Shown: one piece after another, positions 3 through 42,600 of the stretch | Position numbering within the stretch: position 1 is the stretch's first letter | How the letters are laid out: each line of letters begins with the position of its first letter | Assembly: GCA_965637545.1 (NCBI GenBank) | Contig: OZ281495.1 | Location: 22,816,001-22,880,000, forward strand | Direction: 5' to 3' | DNA from: Phallusia mammillata | Lineage: Eukaryota | Length of the DNA stretch: 64,000 nt | Position numbers and translations under genes: made by a program | Notes under the pieces: generated by a model | Told to the model about the DNA's origin: nothing | Databases searched by the model: none | Seen by the model: the letters and a program-made list of their open reading frames with translations, nothing else

Positions 3-3000
3 CACAAATCTGCAAGAACGGAAAAGTGTAAAGCTTTTTGTAATTTAGGCAAATGTTGCGAAGCGCTTGAGTTGTACGACGAGGCAGTAACAAATCATCA
101 GATTGCTTTAGACATTGCTAACGATCTTCGAAGTTTTCCGCTGATGGAGAAATCGCTTAAAGGCCTTGCGAGCACTCACCGACAGCTACATAAAGTCGAG
201 CAAGCCACACAGTTCTGTCAACAGAGATTGGCGGTATGTGAACGAATGGCACAGCCTTCACTAATTGCATCCGCATGCGGCGATCTCGCAGTCCTGCTAT
301 CTGAAACCCACAAGCATTTGGAAGCTATAGAACACCTAAAACGACAGATGAAGATAGGTGTTGACGCCAGCGACCAGAGCATCACCGCTGATGCAGCATG
401 TGGAATCGGAAGCGTTTATCAGGCCATGAGGGACTTTGATAATGCAGTGAATTTCCATAAGCTGGACCTGGAGATCTCACAGAAGAGCGACAATCAACCA
501 TGCCAGGGCAGAGCTCATGGCAACCTGGCCGCGGTGTATGAGCAAATGGGAAACCATGACGGTGCGATCGCCCATCAGGAACAACATTTGTTCATTGCAA
601 ACGAACAAAACGATGAGGTTGCCAAACAGATTGCTCTTTACGGGATCGGCAGGTATGTACAAATTGTGGCTTAATTTACCCTCTGTAGGAGCCAGAACGT
701 CTAAAACCATTGCAATCATTGTGAGCCTATCGTCGAGCTATTTTTTTCGCTGCTTTGCTTGACCATTTTTTGCATTCGTACAAGTTAAATTCTAAAATGA
801 ACATAAATTCAAAACTGGGATCAGCCCTGAAGCTTCCATATAGACCAGCGATCACGGCACACTCATATATACATCGATATAACGCCTTCAACGAGCCTGA
901 CGACTGCGAATTTAAATTCTGGCAACAAAATATCACACGAAACAAAGCTTGGTTTTGACATACCGAACTAATCATACACTCGTTTTTTTTGCAGAAACAC
1001 ACTTCTTCAAAGCAACGGTGACTATTCCCGGGCTGCTCTTCTCCTCCAGCAAGCAATGTTGCTCCACAACGATTCCACCAGCGTGGACCTCATTGTGAAA
1101 ACCCGTCATTATCTGGGAATTGCCATGCTTGCTTGTGGCAATCAAATATCAGCTACAGAACATCTGAAAAAGGCTGCAACTCTCGCCGAGGACACATGTT
1201 GGCAAATGCTTAGAGACTGGAATCCGCCCGACGATAATCTAAGCGCATATGATACAGAGTTAAACCTGTTTGAGACATTGAACATGTGTTATGCTTCTTT
1301 ACTGCACGTCTTGGTCAAGACTGGGCGACACGACGAAGCGTTGGAAATAGCTGAGAAACTGAAGTCTTTTACGGCAAAAATTTCCAACGCTGATCGGTCT
1401 GAAGTGCTAAAATCTACCACAGTAATGGAAATGAAAGCTTATTGCAAAGAACACAGAACTGTCATGTATTATGCCGCTGTCTGTTCAGGACACTTGTACC
1501 GATGGTTAATTACACCAGAAGGTGAATTGCTGCCTACAGAATGCGAACGTATCCTTAACGAAGATGCCACATGTGGCAACGTAATTCAGGCGCTTATTTT
1601 GGGTTTACGTCAAACACTGGGAGTTGAAAATGAAGAAATCGAAGAATCGAACTTAGAGGATAAAAACCTTGAAGTTAATTGTCTGAGCTTGTTTTCTAAA
1701 CTTCTCCAACTGCGAAGAAAATTCCACTGTTACTGCGATCATATTAAAACAAGCCAAGGTTTATTACTGTCTGATAACAACGCCAAGCAGTTTGATCACA
1801 AGTCTCCATATTACTCACTTTACGAATTGTTGTTCGGGGGATTTGATACCACTCTGCGCAAGTACATGAACGCTCAATCGCCGACTCCACTTAATCTTGT
1901 CATCGATGGCGACCTTATCCTCGTACCTTTCTGCATGATGAAAAAGCGACCAAGCGACCATTTTCTATCCGAAAACTTTCATTTGACCGCTGTTAATTCG
2001 TTCCATGACCTGACAACCGCTTCCTTTCATAACGACAACCTTGCAAACTACCAAAGAGGACTGGTAGTAGGCAATCCAACGTTACCTGCATCACTGCTCG
2101 ATCACGGTTGGATCCCGTCTCAAGCAGCAGACGAAGAGGCGAATCTGATTGGTGGAGTCCTACGGGTCGAGCCAATCACAGGGCGTTCGGCAAACAAGGA
2201 GGAAGTCATGGCTAAATGCGAAAGTGCCGAGGTTGTTCATTTTGCCTGCCACGTCACGTGGGGATGCCCTACTGGCGTAGTGTTGTGCAGCTCAACCCAG
2301 GACGACTCTGCGATCGGTGAAGTTGACGAGTTCTCTCTCGCAACACCAACTGGCGAGAAAACATCTCCAGTGTGTAAAACGATAGACTTATCAGACCACG
2401 TGCTTTCAGATACCGACATCCTGGCTTTAAACTTAAGCAAAGTTAAACTGGTCGTTCTCGGTTCGTCGTACCTATGTAAAACGCAAGGAACCGAAAGTCA
2501 TATCTCGAAACTTGCTTCGTCGGTAACCAGTCTTACCAGCGCTTTCTCCGTGGCGGGTGCGCGCACTTTGCTATTTTCAATGTGGCCGGTACCAGAGACT
2601 GCGTGGAAGTTAATAGCGCAGACGTTCTTTGCAAAGCTGTTGGACGGTATAACCACGTGCGAAGCGCTTGAGGCAGCGATGACAGCACTTCGAGACAGTC
2701 AGCAGTTCGGACACCCTTCCTACTGGGCTGGGTTTGTGCTGCTCGGCCCTGCAGCACGATTAAGTGAGATGGACCTTTCCACTATCAACGCGCTGTACTC
2801 GGTATTACAAGGCAGTGGTGTACATGCTCAGGGGGTGATCAAACTTATGAACCACTTGATCGGAAAGTCGCTAAAACGGGAAGCAGCAAACGACAACAAT
2901 AATTCCGTACCCATGTACACTTCACAGGTTAGTGACACAATATTTGTACAAGAAACTGTTGTGCAGTCTGACAACTTACTGCATAATATGATTATGCTCG

Positions 3001-5958
3001 CAAATACCCATGTGTTGTAACTTTTGTGAGGTTTTAATAGCTGTTATGTTTTGATTAACGCTTGATGTAGCAAAGATTACATGAGCGTAAAATATGTACA
3101 AGAAACTGTTGTGCAGTCTGACAAATAACTCACTTCAGCATAAGATTAGGCTTGCATTTTATGCGTTGTAAATTTTGTCAGGTATTAGTAGCTGCTATAT
3201 TTTGATTAATGCTTCATGTTCCTAAGGTCACTTAAGCGCAAGGTGCTTAGCTGTCCAAGTAATTAAACGTCTTCCTGTTATATGACAGGAAAGCGTAGCA
3301 GAGAAGCTACACGATGCTAAGGGTTGGAGGGAACTTTTCTCTGCTTCAGGTTTTGAACTTCGCGCAAGTTCCAACGGTTTACCGCCCGCCATATTTTTTC
3401 CACAACCTCATAACAACCATAACCTGGAGGTAGGGATAGACTATTTTGATATTTTGTCTGCAATCGATTGCTGGTAGATTGAAACAACAGCTTTGAAAGC
3501 TGTATTGCCGTAGTCTTAAACGTATATTGATTTGCACAGAGTATATCAAGCATGTTGAAGCCATTTCTTGAACTCCCTTCTGAGATATTGACCAGCCTTG
3601 GACAGTTGACGTTGTCACCCGGGGTAGCTAATGCATTGCTTAACTGGCTTCGTGCTGCCGTCTTGGCCCCGCTGAAGGAAAGCACAAAACCACTTACGCT
3701 ACTTAAGCAGATAAATGCCGATCTTCACATCGACCGAAACGTTTGGGAAAGCGACGGATGCAGTCAACTGCTTTCAAACCTTGGTACTTCTTGTGTATAT
3801 TTTTTTCAAGTTGGGATGAGTTGGATATATCATATACTGGTGATTTATTGTTATTGGGATATTTTGTATACGACAGGCATTCACATGACAACCGTACAAG
3901 AAGACACAGTGAACCTTTCAGTAAAACCAAACCTATCACTTGATGTTTTGTCAGCCGTAACTGAAGCGCTTCACATATTGTTCGGTGAGTCCACACAATC
4001 AAACCAGTTGTTTTCATGTCGCTAGTATTGTGCAGCAAATGGAGAACTAAAACTAAAACAAGTAGTTGATTTGTAGCACTATAAACATTTTTGTCTTTCA
4101 GCTTGGTCCCAAAAGTATTTATTTCAAGTTTAGTTTTTGTGTAAGTGGTTTAGCGTTTTTTTCACATTGTAGGAAGTTACTGTTCACGTGAAGGTGCCGA
4201 ATTAGCTGGTTATGAACAAACGAACGGCCACGACGAAAAAGATTCGCATGTTGCATACAAACCAAAGGTAAATATAATGCCCAGAAGCCAAGGCAAACTT
4301 TGTACAACCTGTTGCTTCCCGTGTTGTACTAAGCGCCTCCATTAACTAACCCCAATTTGATTTCAGGTCGCAAAAGTAATGCCACAGACCTCCAGGCCCT
4401 TGAGGCAGCGAATATCTACCACCCGGTTTCCCATCGCAATCGACTTCAATAGTTCGTATCAGTCGATTAGCACCAGTGAAGAAAGTTGGCATCAGCATGA
4501 CGGCATTGACAACAGCGCCTCACGTGGTGACTGTGGTATCCTCACTCTGGAGGAACCGAAAGTTTTTACCCAAGTACCAAGCGGCACTGGTTTAATCGTG
4601 CCCACTCCTGTGATGCCACAGGTATGCAGTGGAGCGTGTTAGCATTTTGGATTTTTCAGTTGTAGTACTGGGGATGGGCTAAAGCAGCAAATGATCTGTT
4701 TGGTCGAACACCGAGCATCTTACGCTAGTCACTAGTGCATGGTGCTCTGGCTGGCATGTTCGGTTTACTGTGACGTCACAAACTTTCCTAATTCTACCCT
4801 AGTTTTGTAGCTTTCCAAGGTCCCTCACGCCACCAACGGTGTATTATGCTGTACCTGCCCCAAAAGTACATTAAAAGCGTCGATGTTCGGTATTGAGTTC
4901 TCAGGTTCTGACTCGGTTCGGCCTATCCCTAGTAACAACCATGTTTTCTCCATGGCGTTTTCTCCCTAAACTGCAGTGTAAATGTTTTTTTCAACTGCAA
5001 ACTATTGCCTTTCTACCTTCAAAATGTACTAAACAACTTGACAGAATATTTTTTGCTTTAGAAATCTCCGCATGTGAGTCCGACCAAACTTTCATCACCC
5101 AGCGCATTTAGTCCGACCCGGAAGTTCCAGCACGCGTCCTCGTTCAACGACATAAACCAAGCATCGTTGCCCTCATTTCTTGCAGTCGCTTCTGATGAAC
5201 AACGCCGCGAGGTGTCGCCAGTCACCCCAAACTCACCTGGCAAAAGCCCGGGAGTCGGGCACTCAAATGTCGGCGCAATGTTCTACCAAGCTTCGAGAGG
5301 TCATGATCCAAAGGTTTGTGTGGTTAACCCAACGCCTGGAGAGCAACAGAAGCAGCCCACTTCGCGTAAGTCTGAAGAAAGATTTATGACGGTCTTCGAG
5401 GATATGCTTGTACGTAAATCCTCGCAATCTTCTTCAGGCCGCAAAGGCTCGCTTACAGAATCTGTCAGCTCTATTAACTCTGTAAACAAGATCCAAAAGC
5501 CTCCTAAACGTGAAACAGAGCATGGATACAAACCGAGTCGAAGCGCAGCCAGCACTCTCAACTCGTACTCGCCACAGCGGGAGTACAGCGATATTGTGGA
5601 TCAGCTTTCCCAAGCCCGCATAACACCCGGTTTAACCCAAGACCTCACACACACTCACACCGCGTACCGTATCGTAAACACACCACACAGTGGCGCTAAA
5701 CAAGCACCAAAAGTGCAAGCTTACAAGGTGGAAACAGTTTTTACTCCGATCTCCACTGAAACATCACTTATAGGGGACCCCAACCGTCTTACTGCCTCTG
5801 CGTCGTTTTCTGGTATTGGAAAGCAACAGGGAGGTGCCAAATCGCCAGCGCGGTCGGTGCCATCGGCTTCATCGCCCTCGTCGAGGTCAGACATTTTTCA
5901 GCATTTATCGACGATGAGTAAAGATGACAACGCCGATGAGAGAGTCGAATTTGTTTGA
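3..5958 (+). CDS. TTC28: TTC28-like TPR-repeat + CHAT-domain protein (5' end outside window; multi-exon)
   Basis: Frame is open from the window start with TPR repeats (e.g. QGRAHGNLAAVYEQMG, AACGIGSVYQAM). Phase-consistent exons: 3-652, 995-2927 (CHAT motifs LVIDGDLILVPF, VHFACH, GARTLLFSMWPV, HPSYWAGFVLLG), about 3290-3430 (GWRELFSASGF..LPPAIFFP), about 3540-3782, about 3875-3985, about 4172-4267, 4368-4621, 5062-5958 (Ser/Pro-rich tail, TGA). The post-CHAT segment ..KSLKR..PMYTSQ|ESV.. matches the TTC28 C-terminal region as I recall it. Confidence 0.85.
2940..3243. repeat. Diverged tandem duplication, unit about 150 bp, intronic in TTC28
   Basis: TGTACAAGAAACTGTTGTGCAGTCTGACAA occurs at about 2945 and about 3096. 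The downstream sequences stay alignable (TGTTGTAACTTTTGTGAGG / CGTTGTAAATTTTGTCAGG; TTTTGATTAACGCTT / TTTTGATTAATGCTT). Confidence 0.85.
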
Positions 5959-36600: not shown

Positions 36601-39600
36601 CACTTTGTTTAATCTAGGTGTTGCAGAAGGCTATATCACTGGAACCAAACAATCATATTTTGTGGAACAGTCTTGGGGTTGTAACATCTTCGAAATACAT
36701 TGAGGTAAAGATAAATCAACAACTATTTTTGTGACGCATAACTTGTTGACCCAGAGTTGAACGTTTGCCAGGATTTTAAGGGCCTGACTTCACATTCTAT
36801 GCCTGTAATTTTTTTAACTGTAATTACCCAGCAAAGTAGCTATTTGCTGGACTAAACCTAATGCCCAAACAGCCCTAAAACGTCTTGTTTACGCCATTAT
36901 CTATTATTGTCTATTGAATATGTCTTTTTTTACAATCCTGTCATTCAAATTTTCGGGCCTAAAACGGGCTTCTTAAAAATGACTCTTCATACCCGCTTAC
37001 AACTCTGCCAACAGTTAATGTAATGTACAAATTTAAAGTTGGGTAACTTATTGTGCATTGGCTGTAATTTTTGCAGAATTGGGGTTTGGCTCAGCATTCG
37101 TTCATCAAGTCAATCGAGGCAGACAGCAACAACTGCTGGGCGTGGAGCAACCTTGGCTTTATGTATTTGCGGCAGATGGAAGTTCAGTTGGCACACAGAG
37201 CGTTCAAAGTTGCCCAAAGCCTGGAACCTTCGTTTCCCAACAGTTGGATCGGACAGGTTTGTGCAAAAGACCACCAGTCCATAGACATATTGGCACTAAA
37301 AATAATTTACCTAAATACAAATGTGATTCTTGTGGACTGTGACACAAACACATAATGATAATGCTATATTTGATGTTATGTGACACACTAAATGATTTTA
37401 TGGCATTTCGATTTCCCGAACCTAATTGCCAAAATTTTAAGAATTCTTGTTTTCGTGGTAAAACGCCTTTCGCTTCAGGAAAATGGTAAAAACTGTACTT
37501 CTGTATTTAGACGTTTTTATTTCTGTATTTTTTTGCATTTAAAAATGTTTTTAGGCGTTGGTTGCTGAAAACATTGAAAGTCATGAAGCGATGGATTTGT
37601 TTCGACATGCTACAGAATTGGGTTTGCACGGACAATCAGGAACGGGTAAAACACGCTTTTGTTTTATAATATCGCTACCAATAGGTTCGAGTGACAAATG
37701 CCGGAACAAGTGGGCCCATGCTGAGTGCACTTGACTGTTTCAATTTAATCTCGCAGGTTATGCTTCATGGGTGGTTAAACTTATTACTGAATGTGACGAC
37801 CGATCAACTTCACGTTACCGAGAAAACATCCACGACATGGATGCTATACAAGCTGCACAAACTCAGCTGTCCAAATTCTGCACTCGACACCCAGACTGGT
37901 GAAAAACATTTTAAAAACATATTTGTTGTTTATCTGCACTGTTGCCATGTATTGGTACGCTCTGAAGAAGACGTCAAAGCTTTTGCCCTAACAAAATATT
38001 TTTCCTAAACCATCAACTATAGTATAAAAACGCCAAAGATTGGGACTGAGAGGCGTTTGAAACTTTTTTCTCAACCGGTTTGGTGCCTAATTTTTTTTTG
38101 TCATATGAATATGCAGATACAAACTAATAAATAAATATTTGTACTTGAAAAATATTTTTTGTATGTTGTGCAATTATTTAAATCCGCGGACTTTGGGTCG
38201 AGAAACACTTCAAAACTTTTTTATTGTTCTTAATGATGCCTAAACAGAGCTTTTTTTCGTTTTTAGTGCGTGGGCTCTCACTTTGCACGGTTTCATACTG
38301 GAGCAATCCAGTTTAAACCGGTCCGCAGAGGAAGCTTACAAAAAGGCGAAGGAAGTTCTCGAGTCAGAAGCTGCGAACTGTGATGAGTCAACCGCCTCTT
38401 CTATTGCACCAAAGCTCGATAAAGCAAAATCTAATTATGCTCGTCTTGTTTGGTATACTTAATGCTAAATTGTATTCCTGTTTTCATATCTCTCGGAACA
38501 ATGCCCACAAATATGAATGTCGATGGGTCCAATCGGACCATTTGGTTGCTTACCTTATATGGTTGTGAATTTCAAAAGTATCAAAATTAATTTTGTTTTA
38601 ATTTTAGCGTTAATGGAAACTTCAACAAGGCTGCAGAAATCTATAAAACCATTACATCGCCAACATTTCACGATCTTTGCGGTTTGGCGTTGTCACTTCG
38701 TCAATCCAACAAATTGAAAGACGCATTAAAAACATACCAAGAGGTATTTACACACAGTTACTGAAACATTTCGATCAACGATTCACTGGCCTCTTGTGAC
38801 TATATCAAGTTACTTTTTAAAGGCTTGCCACATGGTGGCGACAGACGAAGATCAAGCAAATGTGGCAGTTGCCATGGTGACACTATCTCTTCGTATGAAG
38901 AATATTGATAGTGCAAAAGACCTGTTACTGCCATGGATTGAATGTTCAAGGATTGCACGGCAAACACTAGAAGCTATAGGTATGAACGGCTAAACAACTA
39001 TGGTCATTCTTAACAAAGCTGTAAATGTAAAAATTGTTTTCAAGGTCACACAGATCCTTATAATGGTATGTAAATATAAATCGTACGTTTAAAAATATAT
39101 AACTGAAATGGTAAATATTTGTTGGAATTATCTTTTTTCATTACGACATTTCGACAAACGTATGTATATGATGTTGTTCTGTCGCATAATGTATTAATAG
39201 TTTGTTGTGTGTATAGGGCTTGACGGATAACACGGTTATTTTACAGACATCGTCCGGGGCTCTCCCTTAACCGAAAACTTGACATCGGGATCCACACCGC
39301 CTTCATCACGTGACCAACTACGCAATTGTTTGCTCGAGGTTGCGTCATCATTAATGCGCGATCGCCAATCTGCGCATCGCAAAGTGCAAAAATACATACA
39401 TAGGTTTGTTGCGTTTGCTTTACCTTAAATTTACGATGAGTTTTGTAACGCGTTTTGCCTTGGGTACCAATAATGGTTTTGGATACTTGGGAAACGGTTT
39501 TATGGCTTTCGGGATAACGGCAATGACTTGGTAAACAAGAGAAACCCTTTACACGTTAAACAGTAACTAGTATTAGGCTGATAAGTTGTATGATAAATTC

Positions 39601-42600
39601 CTCTCGAAATGTTTACCCCAAGGGTCTCTTTCAGTGAAACTTTTTATCTAGAACAAAGTTTAACTGATTAAACAGAAGTTGTGTTGACACCTGCATGGAA
39701 AAACCCTTGAGAAAAATATTCTTTGTTTTCTCATCAGGTTTCCCCATGAGTGGAGGTTTCGTGTGCTGCTAAGTCACATGATTCAAATTCGGACTGTTAA
39801 CGTACCTTTGTCCCTGGTCATGGCCCGAAACGGATTTCTGTGTTACACCAACGATGTCACGTGCGCGTCAATCAACCGTGACCTTGTGCGCCAAAGCGGA
39901 ACGAGATGTTTGGAAAATCACCGAAAATCAATTACCTCACTTGCTTGTTCCTTACTAAGCAGCGGAAAACACCGCTTCGGGTCAAGTCACTTAAACAAGT
40001 ATGTAAATGAGCTGGATGATAACAAACAGGGACTAGATAGTGGAACGTTAAGAAACATACCAGACAACTATTCCATGACGTCGTGATACACTTAACATTC
40101 CAAATCCTAACTAGACCTGTAAAAGCATATAGAGCCAATAAATGATAAGCTGCAGACAGTGCACACTGTTTCGACCTATAAGGTCTCATCTTATAGGTCG
40201 AAACAGTGTGCACTGTCTGCAGCTTATCAGTTATTGGCTCTATATGCTTTTACATTGATACTGTGACACTGAGCCGACTTCACTGTGGTTCCCAAGCAGT
40301 TGCTTGGCCATTGTGAGCCAGTTTCATCTGTGCTGTATACCCAGTTGTGGCATCGCACAGACTAGGTGATGCATGGGGTTGCACCCTGTTGCTCACCACA
40401 AACTGGAGTGCCGTTGGATGGCTACACTAGCCAATACGGCCGATCTCGTCACCAGCTGCACTGATGAGACCTTATAGGTCGAAACAGTGTGCACTGTCTG
40501 CAGCCTAACTAGACCTCTCATAACAATAATAAGTGCCACTGCCAGCTAAAATCGGAAGGAATGTATTACAGTAAACCTCGGTTAATCTAGGCCCCCTTTT
40601 CGACCGAAAAAAATATCCGGATTTGGCGAGGATCCGAAATAATCGATGTGGATTAGTTCAAGTTTTACCACATTACAAATTATTTTAACCTTCGAGTTTT
40701 GTCCGAATTAGGCGAAGATTTGGTTTAACCTAGGTATACCGTATACTGTTCCTTGATCGTTGATTAGATTGTTATATTCTTAAAATTATATTACTAGGTC
40801 TGGCGACGATGCCTTGAAAAGTGCACAGAGGTTGGTACACTGCCACCCTTACTCAACTGAGTCCTGGTCCGTCCTCTCCGCTTCTTGTTACGCCAATTCC
40901 ATTTATTCAAAGTAAGTACTGTAGTATAATTTATACTGGTTATCTGAATATTTGCAATGTTTTTGTTTTTCGAAGGCTGAAGGAGCAACCAGATAAGTTG
41001 GATTCTATTTGTCGTCGCCTGTGTTCATTCGTTGAGCAAAATTCTAGTTCAGATGAGTTGATTCGTTGGTCAACTAAGCAAAAGTTCTTGTCACTTATCG
41101 CGGGAAGCCATTTCAACGAAGTCATCGATTTGGCTTCGGAGGTAGAATTTTGTTTCAACCCTTTGAGGGCGTTTTGGCTTAGTGCCGTTTTGCCGTTTTT
41201 TTTTTGTACATTAAGGGTTCAAAATGGGGTATTTTTCAGATAACTGACGACTTTGAGGAGACTGACGTTTATGTTACGCTGAGTGAATGTGCTTTGGAGT
41301 TTGAGAAAAATGGAAATATCAGCAAATCTCAAATCAACGAACTTAACAACATCGCAACATCGAAATCGTCGTCCCTACACTCCAAAATAGTAAAAAGCTA
41401 CTAACATGTTGTGCATGCACACCAATAATCGATATTATTTCCTCCAATAACAAGCTTTTTTAGCCCGTGTTGATTTAACTTTCACCAATCTATGGGTTTT
41501 TGCACTTAAAAAGCACACTTGAAAAAAATCTTATGGCGCTCTTGTATGCCACGGTACACAGTTTGAGGATACACTGCTTTATAATGTACTGTTTCCGGGT
41601 ATTTTTAATCTTTTGATCTTTATGTCTATTTTAATATTAAAACATAGTGTTGTTTTTTTCAGATCGCCTCACATGCACTTAAATGCGTGGGAATGTACAA
41701 AGCAGCCCATTCCGCTCTAGCTTCCACTTTGTCCAATAGCCCACCGAGCAGCGACCATCGTACCAGTTTAGCTCTTCGGTCATTTGTGGTCGCTTTTGAA
41801 GCATCACGAAACGCATCCCCGGATGAACTAAACGCCTGGATCTTGTTGTGTTCGGAAGCTGTTAATGCCGCTAAACGTGAAGAAAGTCAAGCTGCAACAA
41901 TTCTGGCTGAAGGCTTATGTCGGTATCTGGAGAAAAATCATAGGTAAATTTATACATTGATTTTAGATTTGTGCTTTTGGGTACGTTTGTTACAAAATTT
42001 GTGCCTTTGGTTACAAAGAGTTGGAGTTTCCGTATTCACCCTGTCGCCTATTACCGGCTTGGTGAATGATAGCCACAACAACAACACATTTGTTTTGTGC
42101 CTTGGTGCTGTCAGAGCATTCAAATTTAGGACGCGAGTGAGCAATCTTATGCCATGACTTCAACTTCACTAATCTCTCTAGACTTGTTAAACCTCTTCCA
42201 ATTGTATGAAAAATGAATTATGCAATGACTGGCGTTGCCGAAGCTCTGCCTAAACCAGCACTTGTCAGGGTGATACAGATCTCTAATCCTGTCCCATTCC
42301 ATGTAGAAAATGTCGAGTGATGTTAAACAGAGCTTTGGACAGCGGCCAGTGGTACAGTGGTGGTAAATTATGCATGGGCCGGAGTATTGCGGCCTGGTAC
42401 CTTTATCGGAACCTCCATGAACGGAACGACGCAATGGAGATGGAGGTAAACTGACATGTTCACTATTTAGACTTTTTGATTTTACTCGATGTATTTGTTT
42501 GTATTTTTTTTTCTTTTTGTTTGGTCCTTCCTTGCAGTTTTTCCATCTCTTTTGCCATGAAATGTTAAATGATTTCGGACAAAACTTTTACAGATGGCAG

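What the first reader, a model, noticed from the sequence alone, without database searches (positions are those of the whole stretch)
40119..40504. Hammerhead retrozyme insertion: intact type I ribozyme, 281-nt monomer and 11-13-bp TSD
Seen: a complete hammerhead at 40455-40504 and a second, 5'-truncated copy at 40190-40223, with GUC sites 281 nt apart. In the monomer, stem I can extend (TATTGGCT 40232-39 with AGCCAATA 40429-36), and the interior is self-complementary (CCAAGCA/TGCTTGG 40292-40307; TCTGTGC/GCACAGA). The insert is flanked by a CTAACTAGACC(T) direct repeat. Established: metazoan non-LTR retrozymes are tandem units of a few hundred nt with type I hammerheads that yield circular RNAs and are linked to Penelope-like elements. 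Inference: a recent TPRT-type copy of a circRNA retrozyme family; I am not aware of such a family being characterised in this lineage.
Basis: partly seen in the sequence, partly recalled or inferred. Interest (0 to 1): 0.85.

Follow-up and report, generated by a model that had tools for sequence, protein, structure and literature searches.

The report
Sea-squirt hammerhead retrozyme insertion
This is a real, fairly young 385-bp copy of a small non-coding jumping element with a complete self-cutting hammerhead ribozyme, inserted with the hallmark scars of Penelope-like retrotransposons; it is a kind already described in other animals, and this scan has met it before in the same sea-squirt genome.

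Summary
Window 40119-40503 is a 385-bp insertion flanked by a perfect 13-bp target-site duplication. It carries one complete type I hammerhead (40455-40504, cut after C40498), one full 281-nt unit (40218-40498) and a partial upstream unit.

The insertion is therefore a head-to-head foldback.

- **Family size:** the 38-nt ribozyme core occurs 326 times exactly and 1062 times with up to 3 mismatches. Sampled units are about 97.7% alike and form tandem arrays of up to 4-5 units.
- **Insertion signature:** 15 of 15 TSD-flanked head-to-head insertions have 10-14-bp TSDs and an inverted 5'-truncated arm. In each, one outer end lies 36-43 nt past the cut site and the other 3-12 nt past it. This is the published "tail at one end" signature of Penelope-like elements (PLEs).
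- **Possible mobilisers:** PLEs with intact RT+GIY-YIG ORFs are abundant in this genome. None examined shares this ribozyme.

Verdict: a non-autonomous, PLE-mobilised non-LTR retrozyme, a new member of a known kind. Self-cleavage, circular RNA and the autonomous partner remain untested. The scan had already found this kind of element elsewhere in this genome (s1-408610, s1-382234, s1-353671).

The parts
40106..40118 (.). Left target-site duplication, CCTAACTAGACCT. The last T is ambiguous with the element end.
40118..40154 (-). Inverted arm, outer part: reverse complement of unit positions 1-37. This is the 'long' 3' end, the PLE-type tail.
   Evidence: (L001 1401-1437)
40155..40190 (-). Inverted arm, inner part: reverse complement of unit positions 246-281, the 3' 36 nt of the hammerhead. 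The motif is incomplete on this strand.
40118..40254 (.). Foldback: 65-nt arms 40118-40182 and 40190-40254, 98% complementary with 7 nt between. The junction lies in the palindromic helix II.
40190..40217 (+). 5'-truncated upstream unit (positions 254-281), ending at the first GUC (40215-40217).
40218..40498 (+). One full 281-nt retrozyme unit, cut site to cut site. It is non-coding (longest stop-free stretch 48 codons read circularly) and 50% GC.
40455..40504 (+). Complete type I hammerhead ribozyme. Predicted cleavage is after C40498.
40499..40503 (+). 'Short' 3' end: the first 5 (or 6) nt of the next unit, TGCAG(C).
40504..40516 (.). Right target-site duplication, CCTAACTAGACCT.

Best explanation
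Window 40119-40503 is one insertion of a non-coding, non-autonomous retroelement of the metazoan non-LTR retrozyme kind, copied into an intron of the SKI3/TTC37 homologue by the machinery of a Penelope-like element (PLE).

Shown:
- a canonical type I hammerhead;
- a 281-282-nt unit present in hundreds to thousands of dispersed and tandem copies;
- TSDs of 10-14 bp;
- variable 5' truncation;
- an inverted 5' arm;
- two alternative 3' ends about 30 nt apart, one at each outer end of every head-to-head insertion sampled;
- many resident PLEs with intact RT+GIY-YIG ORFs.

Inferred:
- Array or read-through transcripts are cut by the hammerhead into 281-nt monomers. The stable 5-bp helix III should let it act as a monomer. 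The monomers are closed into circles by the RtcB-type ligase.
- A PLE protein nicks both strands of the target about 13 bp apart.
- Each 3'-OH primes reverse transcription from one of two internal start zones, 3-12 nt or 36-43 nt downstream of the cut site.
- In this copy the right-hand cDNA started at position 5-6 and ran 1.1 units. The left-hand cDNA started at position 37 and ran 73 nt. The two were joined within the helix II palindrome.

Every copy carries the 281|1 junction next to its 3' end. The template therefore cannot have been a cleaved linear monomer. It was either a re-ligated circle or an uncleaved multimer.
For: - Anatomy of this copy.
- Hammerhead.
- Family size: 2236 first-look candidates and 121 matches from 40 scored; 326 exact cores and 1062 with up to 3 mismatches, control 0.
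- Unit similarity: 32 sampled units are on average 97.7% alike.
- Arrays: TSD-flanked arrays of 2-4 units, often identical to each other.
- Ends: 15 of 15 independent TSD-flanked head-to-head insertions have one long and one short end. Two direct-only insertions show one of each.
- Published PLE behaviour: both strands cut and extended, two adjacent internal RT start sites that define the 30-40-bp tail (PMC11167929); inverted 5'-truncated copy and tail at one end only (PMC8557442; PMC3846280).
- Resident PLEs: an RT+GIY-YIG ORF of 705 aa, 878 candidates, many without stops.
- Non-coding: no ORF and no similarity to the PLE protein.
- Transcripts: pieces of the family are present in contigs of four runs guessed to be RNA, at depths far above the immediately adjacent intron sequence.
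Against: - No autonomous PLE sharing this hammerhead or tail was found. The PLE loci in hand have no similarity to them. No exact-core hit listed on contigs C1 and C2 lies beside a listed PLE ORF.
- Self-cleavage and circularity were not tested. The runs are contigs only and their RNA nature is a guess.
- The thermodynamic MFE of the 50-nt motif is an alternative hairpin 1.7 kcal/mol below the catalytic fold.
- For the one PLE studied in vitro, hammerhead cleavage was not needed for insertion (PMC11167929).
- Unit GC is 50%, slightly above the under-45-50% quoted for retrozymes (PMC7229834).
Confidence: 0.82

Rival explanations
1. It is a PLE-dependent parasite, but the hammerhead and circles play no part in copying. 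The template is an uncleaved multimeric or read-through transcript, as for the anole PLE in vitro, and the ribozyme is only an inherited piece of a pLTR.
For: PMC11167929: catalytic hammerhead mutants did not change insertion, and unprocessed RNA was the dominant substrate. All copies keep the uncleaved 281|1 junction. The MFE of the motif is a non-catalytic hairpin.
Against: The core is kept exactly in 326 copies. In the 32 sampled units the hammerhead region is slightly better kept than the rest (99.6% against 98.0% majority frequency). The stable helix III predicts efficient cleavage, which would leave few uncleaved multimers. Units within single TSD-flanked arrays are often identical, as rolling-circle copying of one circle would give. 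Retrozymes of coral, mussel and axolotl are circular in vivo (PMC7229834).
Confidence: 0.13
2. It is a 5'-truncated copy, or solo pseudo-LTR, of an autonomous PLE rather than a separate non-coding family.
For: PLE insertions are often heavily 5'-truncated and carry hammerheads in their pLTRs (PMC8557442, PMC4209133).
Against: Tandem arrays consist of 282-nt units only. The unit has no ORF and no similarity to PLE protein. No listed PLE ORF adjoins a listed core hit. The PLE family examined carries a different, minimal hammerhead-like motif.
Confidence: 0.04
3. It is a foldback or MITE-type DNA transposon, or a satellite spread by unequal crossing-over, with a chance hammerhead-like motif.
For: There is a 65-nt inverted repeat and a TSD, and tandem arrays exist.
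Against: The inverted repeat is not terminal at both ends. Arm lengths and junctions differ between copies. TSD length varies from 10 to 14 bp. 5' truncation points are variable while 3' ends are fixed. Copies are dispersed over all large contigs. The motif is far beyond chance.
Confidence: 0.01

Closest known systems
Metazoan non-LTR retrozymes (Cervera & de la Pena 2020, PMC7229834; Li, Clavereau & Pollet 2026 preprint, 10.64898/2026.07.22.740005)
   Same: A type I hammerhead sits in a non-coding unit of about 300 bp. Copies are tandem, from dimers to multimers, and also dispersed. TSDs are longer than 4 bp. The elements co-occur with PLEs.
   Different: The host is a tunicate, and none was named in the papers read here. 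Helix III is a stable 5-bp stem with a tetraloop, not the 1-2-bp stem with a palindromic loop typical of animal type I hammerheads (PMC4209133, PMC7229834). GC is 50%. Circular RNA is not shown here.
Penelope-like element insertion structure (Arkhipova 2013, PMC3846280; Craig 2021, PMC8557442; Frangieh 2024, PMC11167929)
   Same: It shares the partial tandem, the adjacent inverted 5'-truncated copy, the 30-40-bp tail at one end only, a TSD of about 9-14 bp, two internal RT start sites, and extension of both target strands.
   Different: There is no ORF. The start zones lie only 3-12 and 36-43 nt downstream of the ribozyme cut, against about 85-90 nt in the anole element. The resident PLE family examined carries a minimal hammerhead-like motif, not this canonical one.
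Newt satellite 2, Schistosoma Sm-alpha and cave-cricket pDo500 hammerhead repeats
   Same: These are tandem units of a few hundred nt with type I hammerheads, now counted as retrozymes (PMC7229834).
   Different: Their hammerheads mostly need dimers because helix III is weak. The comparison rests on the literature; those sequences were not compared here.

Membership tests
Metazoan non-LTR retrozyme | Complete type I hammerhead (conserved core, helices I-III, open helix I) | tested here: met
   all core nucleotides are present and all 16 pairs are Watson-Crick.
Metazoan non-LTR retrozyme | Unit of 150-450 bp in tandem, many copies per genome | tested here: met
   Unit of 281-282 nt, arrays up to 4-5 units, 1062 cores within 3 mismatches.
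Metazoan non-LTR retrozyme | No protein-coding capacity, no LTR/PBS/PPT | tested here: met
   Longest stop-free stretch is 48 codons read circularly, and there is no tblastn hit to PLE protein below E 1. PBS and PPT were not looked for specifically.
Metazoan non-LTR retrozyme | Low GC (below 45-50%) | tested here: inconclusive
   Unit GC is 50.2% and the window is 39%. This is a descriptive rather than a defining trait.
Metazoan non-LTR retrozyme | Transcribed and accumulating as self-cleaved, circular monomers | tested here: inconclusive
   Contigs of four runs guessed to be RNA hold family pieces. Contigs cannot show RNA ends or circles.
Metazoan non-LTR retrozyme | Self-cleavage at the predicted site | not testable with these tools
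   Needs in vitro transcription.
PLE-type (GIY-YIG/RT) insertion | Inverted 5'-truncated copy next to a partial tandem, with a 30-40-bp tail at one end only | tested here: met
   This copy, and 15 of 15 TSD-flanked head-to-head insertions.
PLE-type (GIY-YIG/RT) insertion | Autonomous RT+GIY-YIG elements in the same genome | tested here: met
PLE-type (GIY-YIG/RT) insertion | Sequence shared with the pLTR or 3' end of a resident autonomous PLE | tested here: inconclusive
   No similarity in the 11 GIY-YIG loci held.
Rfam RF00163 Hammerhead_1 | Score at or above the gathering threshold (34 bits) | tested here: not met
   22.8 bits with a full-length alignment. The long helix III is scored as an 8-nt insertion. 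The genome-wide family search also rang nowhere, including in its controls.

The most novel reading that the evidence does not exclude
The family is a natural in vivo record of the PLE integration mechanism. In every head-to-head insertion the two target strands were extended from different RT start zones, one 3-12 nt and one 36-43 nt past the ribozyme cut. This obligate asymmetry was not seen in vitro, where both strands used both sites alike. It would point to a fixed geometry of a dimeric PLE complex on a circular, re-ligated retrozyme template. The family would also be the first characterised tunicate retrozyme, with a hammerhead that is active as a monomer.
Probability: 0.25. Interest if true: 0.5.

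Novelty: new member of a known kind. Interest (0 to 1): 0.3.

Why it matters
It adds tunicates, the sister group of vertebrates, to the animals with an apparently active hammerhead retrozyme family. It also supplies many clean, TSD-flanked insertions that display the two-start-site tail signature of Penelope-like elements at base resolution. That could help test models of PLE integration and of circular-RNA templating. For genome annotation, the family explains hundreds of foldback repeats and intronic ribozyme motifs in this assembly. It does not reveal a new kind of element.

Tried and rejected
- Rfam at gathering thresholds on the window found nothing. The genome-wide RF00163 search found nothing, and its controls did not ring either, so it is uninformative.
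- My first spacing pattern for the core was mistyped and found nothing.
- Two 30-mers taken from low-agreement 'loose end' consensus lines, meant to trace sister families that share the ribozyme module, had no genomic match. Those consensus lines are mixtures.
- The search for the autonomous partner failed. Blastn of the unit and of the ribozyme-plus-tail module against 11 GIY-YIG/PLE loci found only an unrelated nearby retrozyme fragment. A hammerhead descriptor found none in those loci.
- Downstream SKI3 exons could not be confirmed by sequence (one search was a frame error).
- The solo-pLTR, MITE and satellite readings were rejected for the reasons given under the rival explanations.

Full report
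**What is there.**
The sequence shows an insertion at 40119-40503 between two perfect copies of a 13-bp target sequence, at 40106-40118 and 40504-40516. One base at each boundary is ambiguous. Read on the + strand, the insert has four parts:
- an inverted arm at 40118-40190, the reverse complement of unit positions 246-281 followed by 1-37;
- a 5'-truncated unit at 40190-40217 (positions 254-281);
- one full 281-nt unit at 40218-40498;
- the first 5-6 nt of a further unit.

The arms 40118-40182 and 40190-40254 are 65 nt long and 98% complementary.

**The ribozyme.**
Positions 40455-40504 form a textbook type I hammerhead.
- Helix I has 6 bp and is open.
- The core reads CUGAUGA.
- Helix II has 5 bp with a G10.1-C11.1 base pair.
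- GAAA follows, then helix III of 5 bp with a GUGC loop, then GUC with cleavage after C40498.

All 16 pairs are Watson-Crick, and the catalytic fold is worth -15.7 kcal/mol. The thermodynamic optimum of the isolated 50-mer is an alternative hairpin at -17.4 kcal/mol. This model ignores tertiary contacts. Rfam's Hammerhead_1 model aligns over its whole length but scores 22.8 bits, under its 34-bit threshold, because the long helix III counts as an insertion. This explains the blank gathering scan. A much looser descriptor hits 0.05 times per shuffled window.

Most animal type I hammerheads have a 1-2-bp helix III and work as dimers (PMC4209133; PMC7229834). This one should be able to cut as a monomer. 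That is an inference.

**The family.**
The genome is about 240 Mb. Earlier notes of this scan call it a sea squirt, one of them Phallusia mammillata; I did not verify the species.
- The unit gives 2236 first-look candidates. The 40 that were scored yield 121 matches at 91-96% identity over full units, on all large contigs, including arrays of 2-5 units of 282 nt.
- The 38-nt core occurs 326 times exactly and 1062 times with up to 3 mismatches, against 0 for the reversed control.
- Thirty-two sampled full units are 97.7% alike on average.
- The window copy differs from the commonest letter at 11 positions. About three of these are private: G at 40230, A at 40339, and a 2-nt deletion after 40443. 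None is in the ribozyme.
- The unit has no ORF and no similarity to PLE protein. It is 50% GC. As a circle it folds 68% paired, with z = -2.1 against shuffles.

**How the copies were made.**
I mapped the ends of 25 distinct loci. Fifteen independent head-to-head insertions, including this one, have 10-14-bp TSDs that are often AT-rich. In every one of the fifteen, one outer end lies at unit position 36-43 and the other at position 3-12, on opposite strands. Inner junctions and arm lengths vary freely. Two direct-only insertions have random 5' truncation points and show one end of each type.

This matches the published signature of Penelope-like elements:
- partial tandems with an adjacent inverted 5'-truncated copy;
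- a 30-40-bp 'tail' present at one end only (PMC8557442; PMC3846280);
- an in vitro explanation, in which the PLE protein cuts and extends both target strands and starts reverse transcription at two adjacent internal sites that bracket the tail (PMC11167929).

Each copy carries the uncleaved 281|1 junction next to its 3' end, and many exceed one unit. The template must therefore have been a circle or an uncleaved multimer, not a cleaved linear monomer. Units within TSD-flanked arrays are often identical to each other. That fits rolling-circle copying of one molecule but does not prove it.

**Possible mobilisers.**
GIY-YIG hits led to a 705-aa ORF with RT and C-terminal GIY-YIG domains. That protein finds 878 candidates and 65 scored matches at 41-100% identity, many without stops. 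PLEs are therefore diverse here and probably active.

None of the PLE loci I could read shares the retrozyme's ribozyme or tail. The family in L039 instead shows, by eye, a minimal PLE-type hammerhead-like motif with a 1-bp helix III and a palindromic loop. The partner is therefore unidentified. Further loci could not be fetched.

**Expression.**
No listed run is on record as RNA. Fourteen runs are guessed to be RNA. Contigs of four of them, from four studies, hold family pieces with summed word depths of tens to more than a thousand. The intron sequence immediately to the left has none. The ribozyme module 40444-40504 is the deepest part, and in many contigs it continues into unlike sequence. 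One reading is that other families share the module; another is that these are simply other insertion sites. Contigs cannot show RNA ends or circles, so transcription is suggested and circularity is untested.

**Context.**
The insertion lies on the + strand about 120 nt downstream of a GTATGT donor at 39999. A 2799-nt contig of run X1 leaves the genome at that point. The gene's upstream exon at 37071-37280 matches human SKI3/TTC37 residues 867-928 (E 7e-20). The ribozyme is therefore in the sense orientation in a probable intron. The intron assignment is inferred, since downstream exons could not be confirmed by sequence.

**Comparison and verdict.**
The element meets the testable defining features of metazoan non-LTR retrozymes and of PLE-type insertions. 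It fails only Rfam's score threshold and sits at the edge of the quoted GC range.

The papers read name no tunicate retrozyme. One tunicate genome paper merely counts 9 type I hammerhead loci (PMC8704543).

The scan itself has already reported this kind of element in other windows of this genome (s1-408610, s1-382234, s1-353671). My results agree with those notes, but I did not compare sequences with their loci.

It is a new member of a known kind, real and well preserved but not surprising. The one feature that might repay attention is the strict one-long, one-short pairing of ends in head-to-head insertions.

Noticed in passing
L039:2404-7391 (G000:C4:7515000-7524999): A head-to-head pair of Penelope-like elements with arms 98-99% complementary. 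One arm has an intact 705-aa RT+GIY-YIG ORF (2856-4970, minus strand). The pair is inserted inside a dense tRNA gene array. About 90-120 nt from its 3' end (roughly 2470-2515, minus strand) lies a minimal PLE-type hammerhead-like motif, read by eye only.
   Followed up: partly
window 40566-40745: An older dispersed repeat of about 170 bp lies just downstream of the retrozyme. It has 1259 first-look candidates in the genome at about 80% identity, is present in the guessed-RNA contigs, and is unclassified.
   Followed up: partly
L026 (G000:C237:4953-8234) and L030 (G000:C3:6522636-6525917): Both loci are the same insertion site, since their TSDs are reverse complements. They hold one and two retrozyme units respectively. 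This is either a haplotig or allelic difference in unit number, or an assembly collapse.
   Followed up: no
window 37071-37280 (+) and the intron around 39999-40900: The host gene is a SKI3/TTC37 (superkiller complex) homologue. The intact hammerhead sits in the sense orientation about 460-500 nt into a probable intron, so the nascent pre-mRNA may be cut there.
   Followed up: partly
L006, L008, L012, L023, L027, L029 (ends listed): At the 'long' end the target sequence often shares 2-6 nt with unit positions about 37-48. This suggests microhomology at the start of reverse transcription, whereas the in vitro study of an anole PLE reported no homology. It was not tested statistically.
   Followed up: no
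L003/L002 (G000:C6:2902051-2908541) and L020: Retrozyme arrays abut runs of N (assembly gaps), and their left flanks are duplicated. These foldback and tandem structures seem to break the assembly.
   Followed up: no
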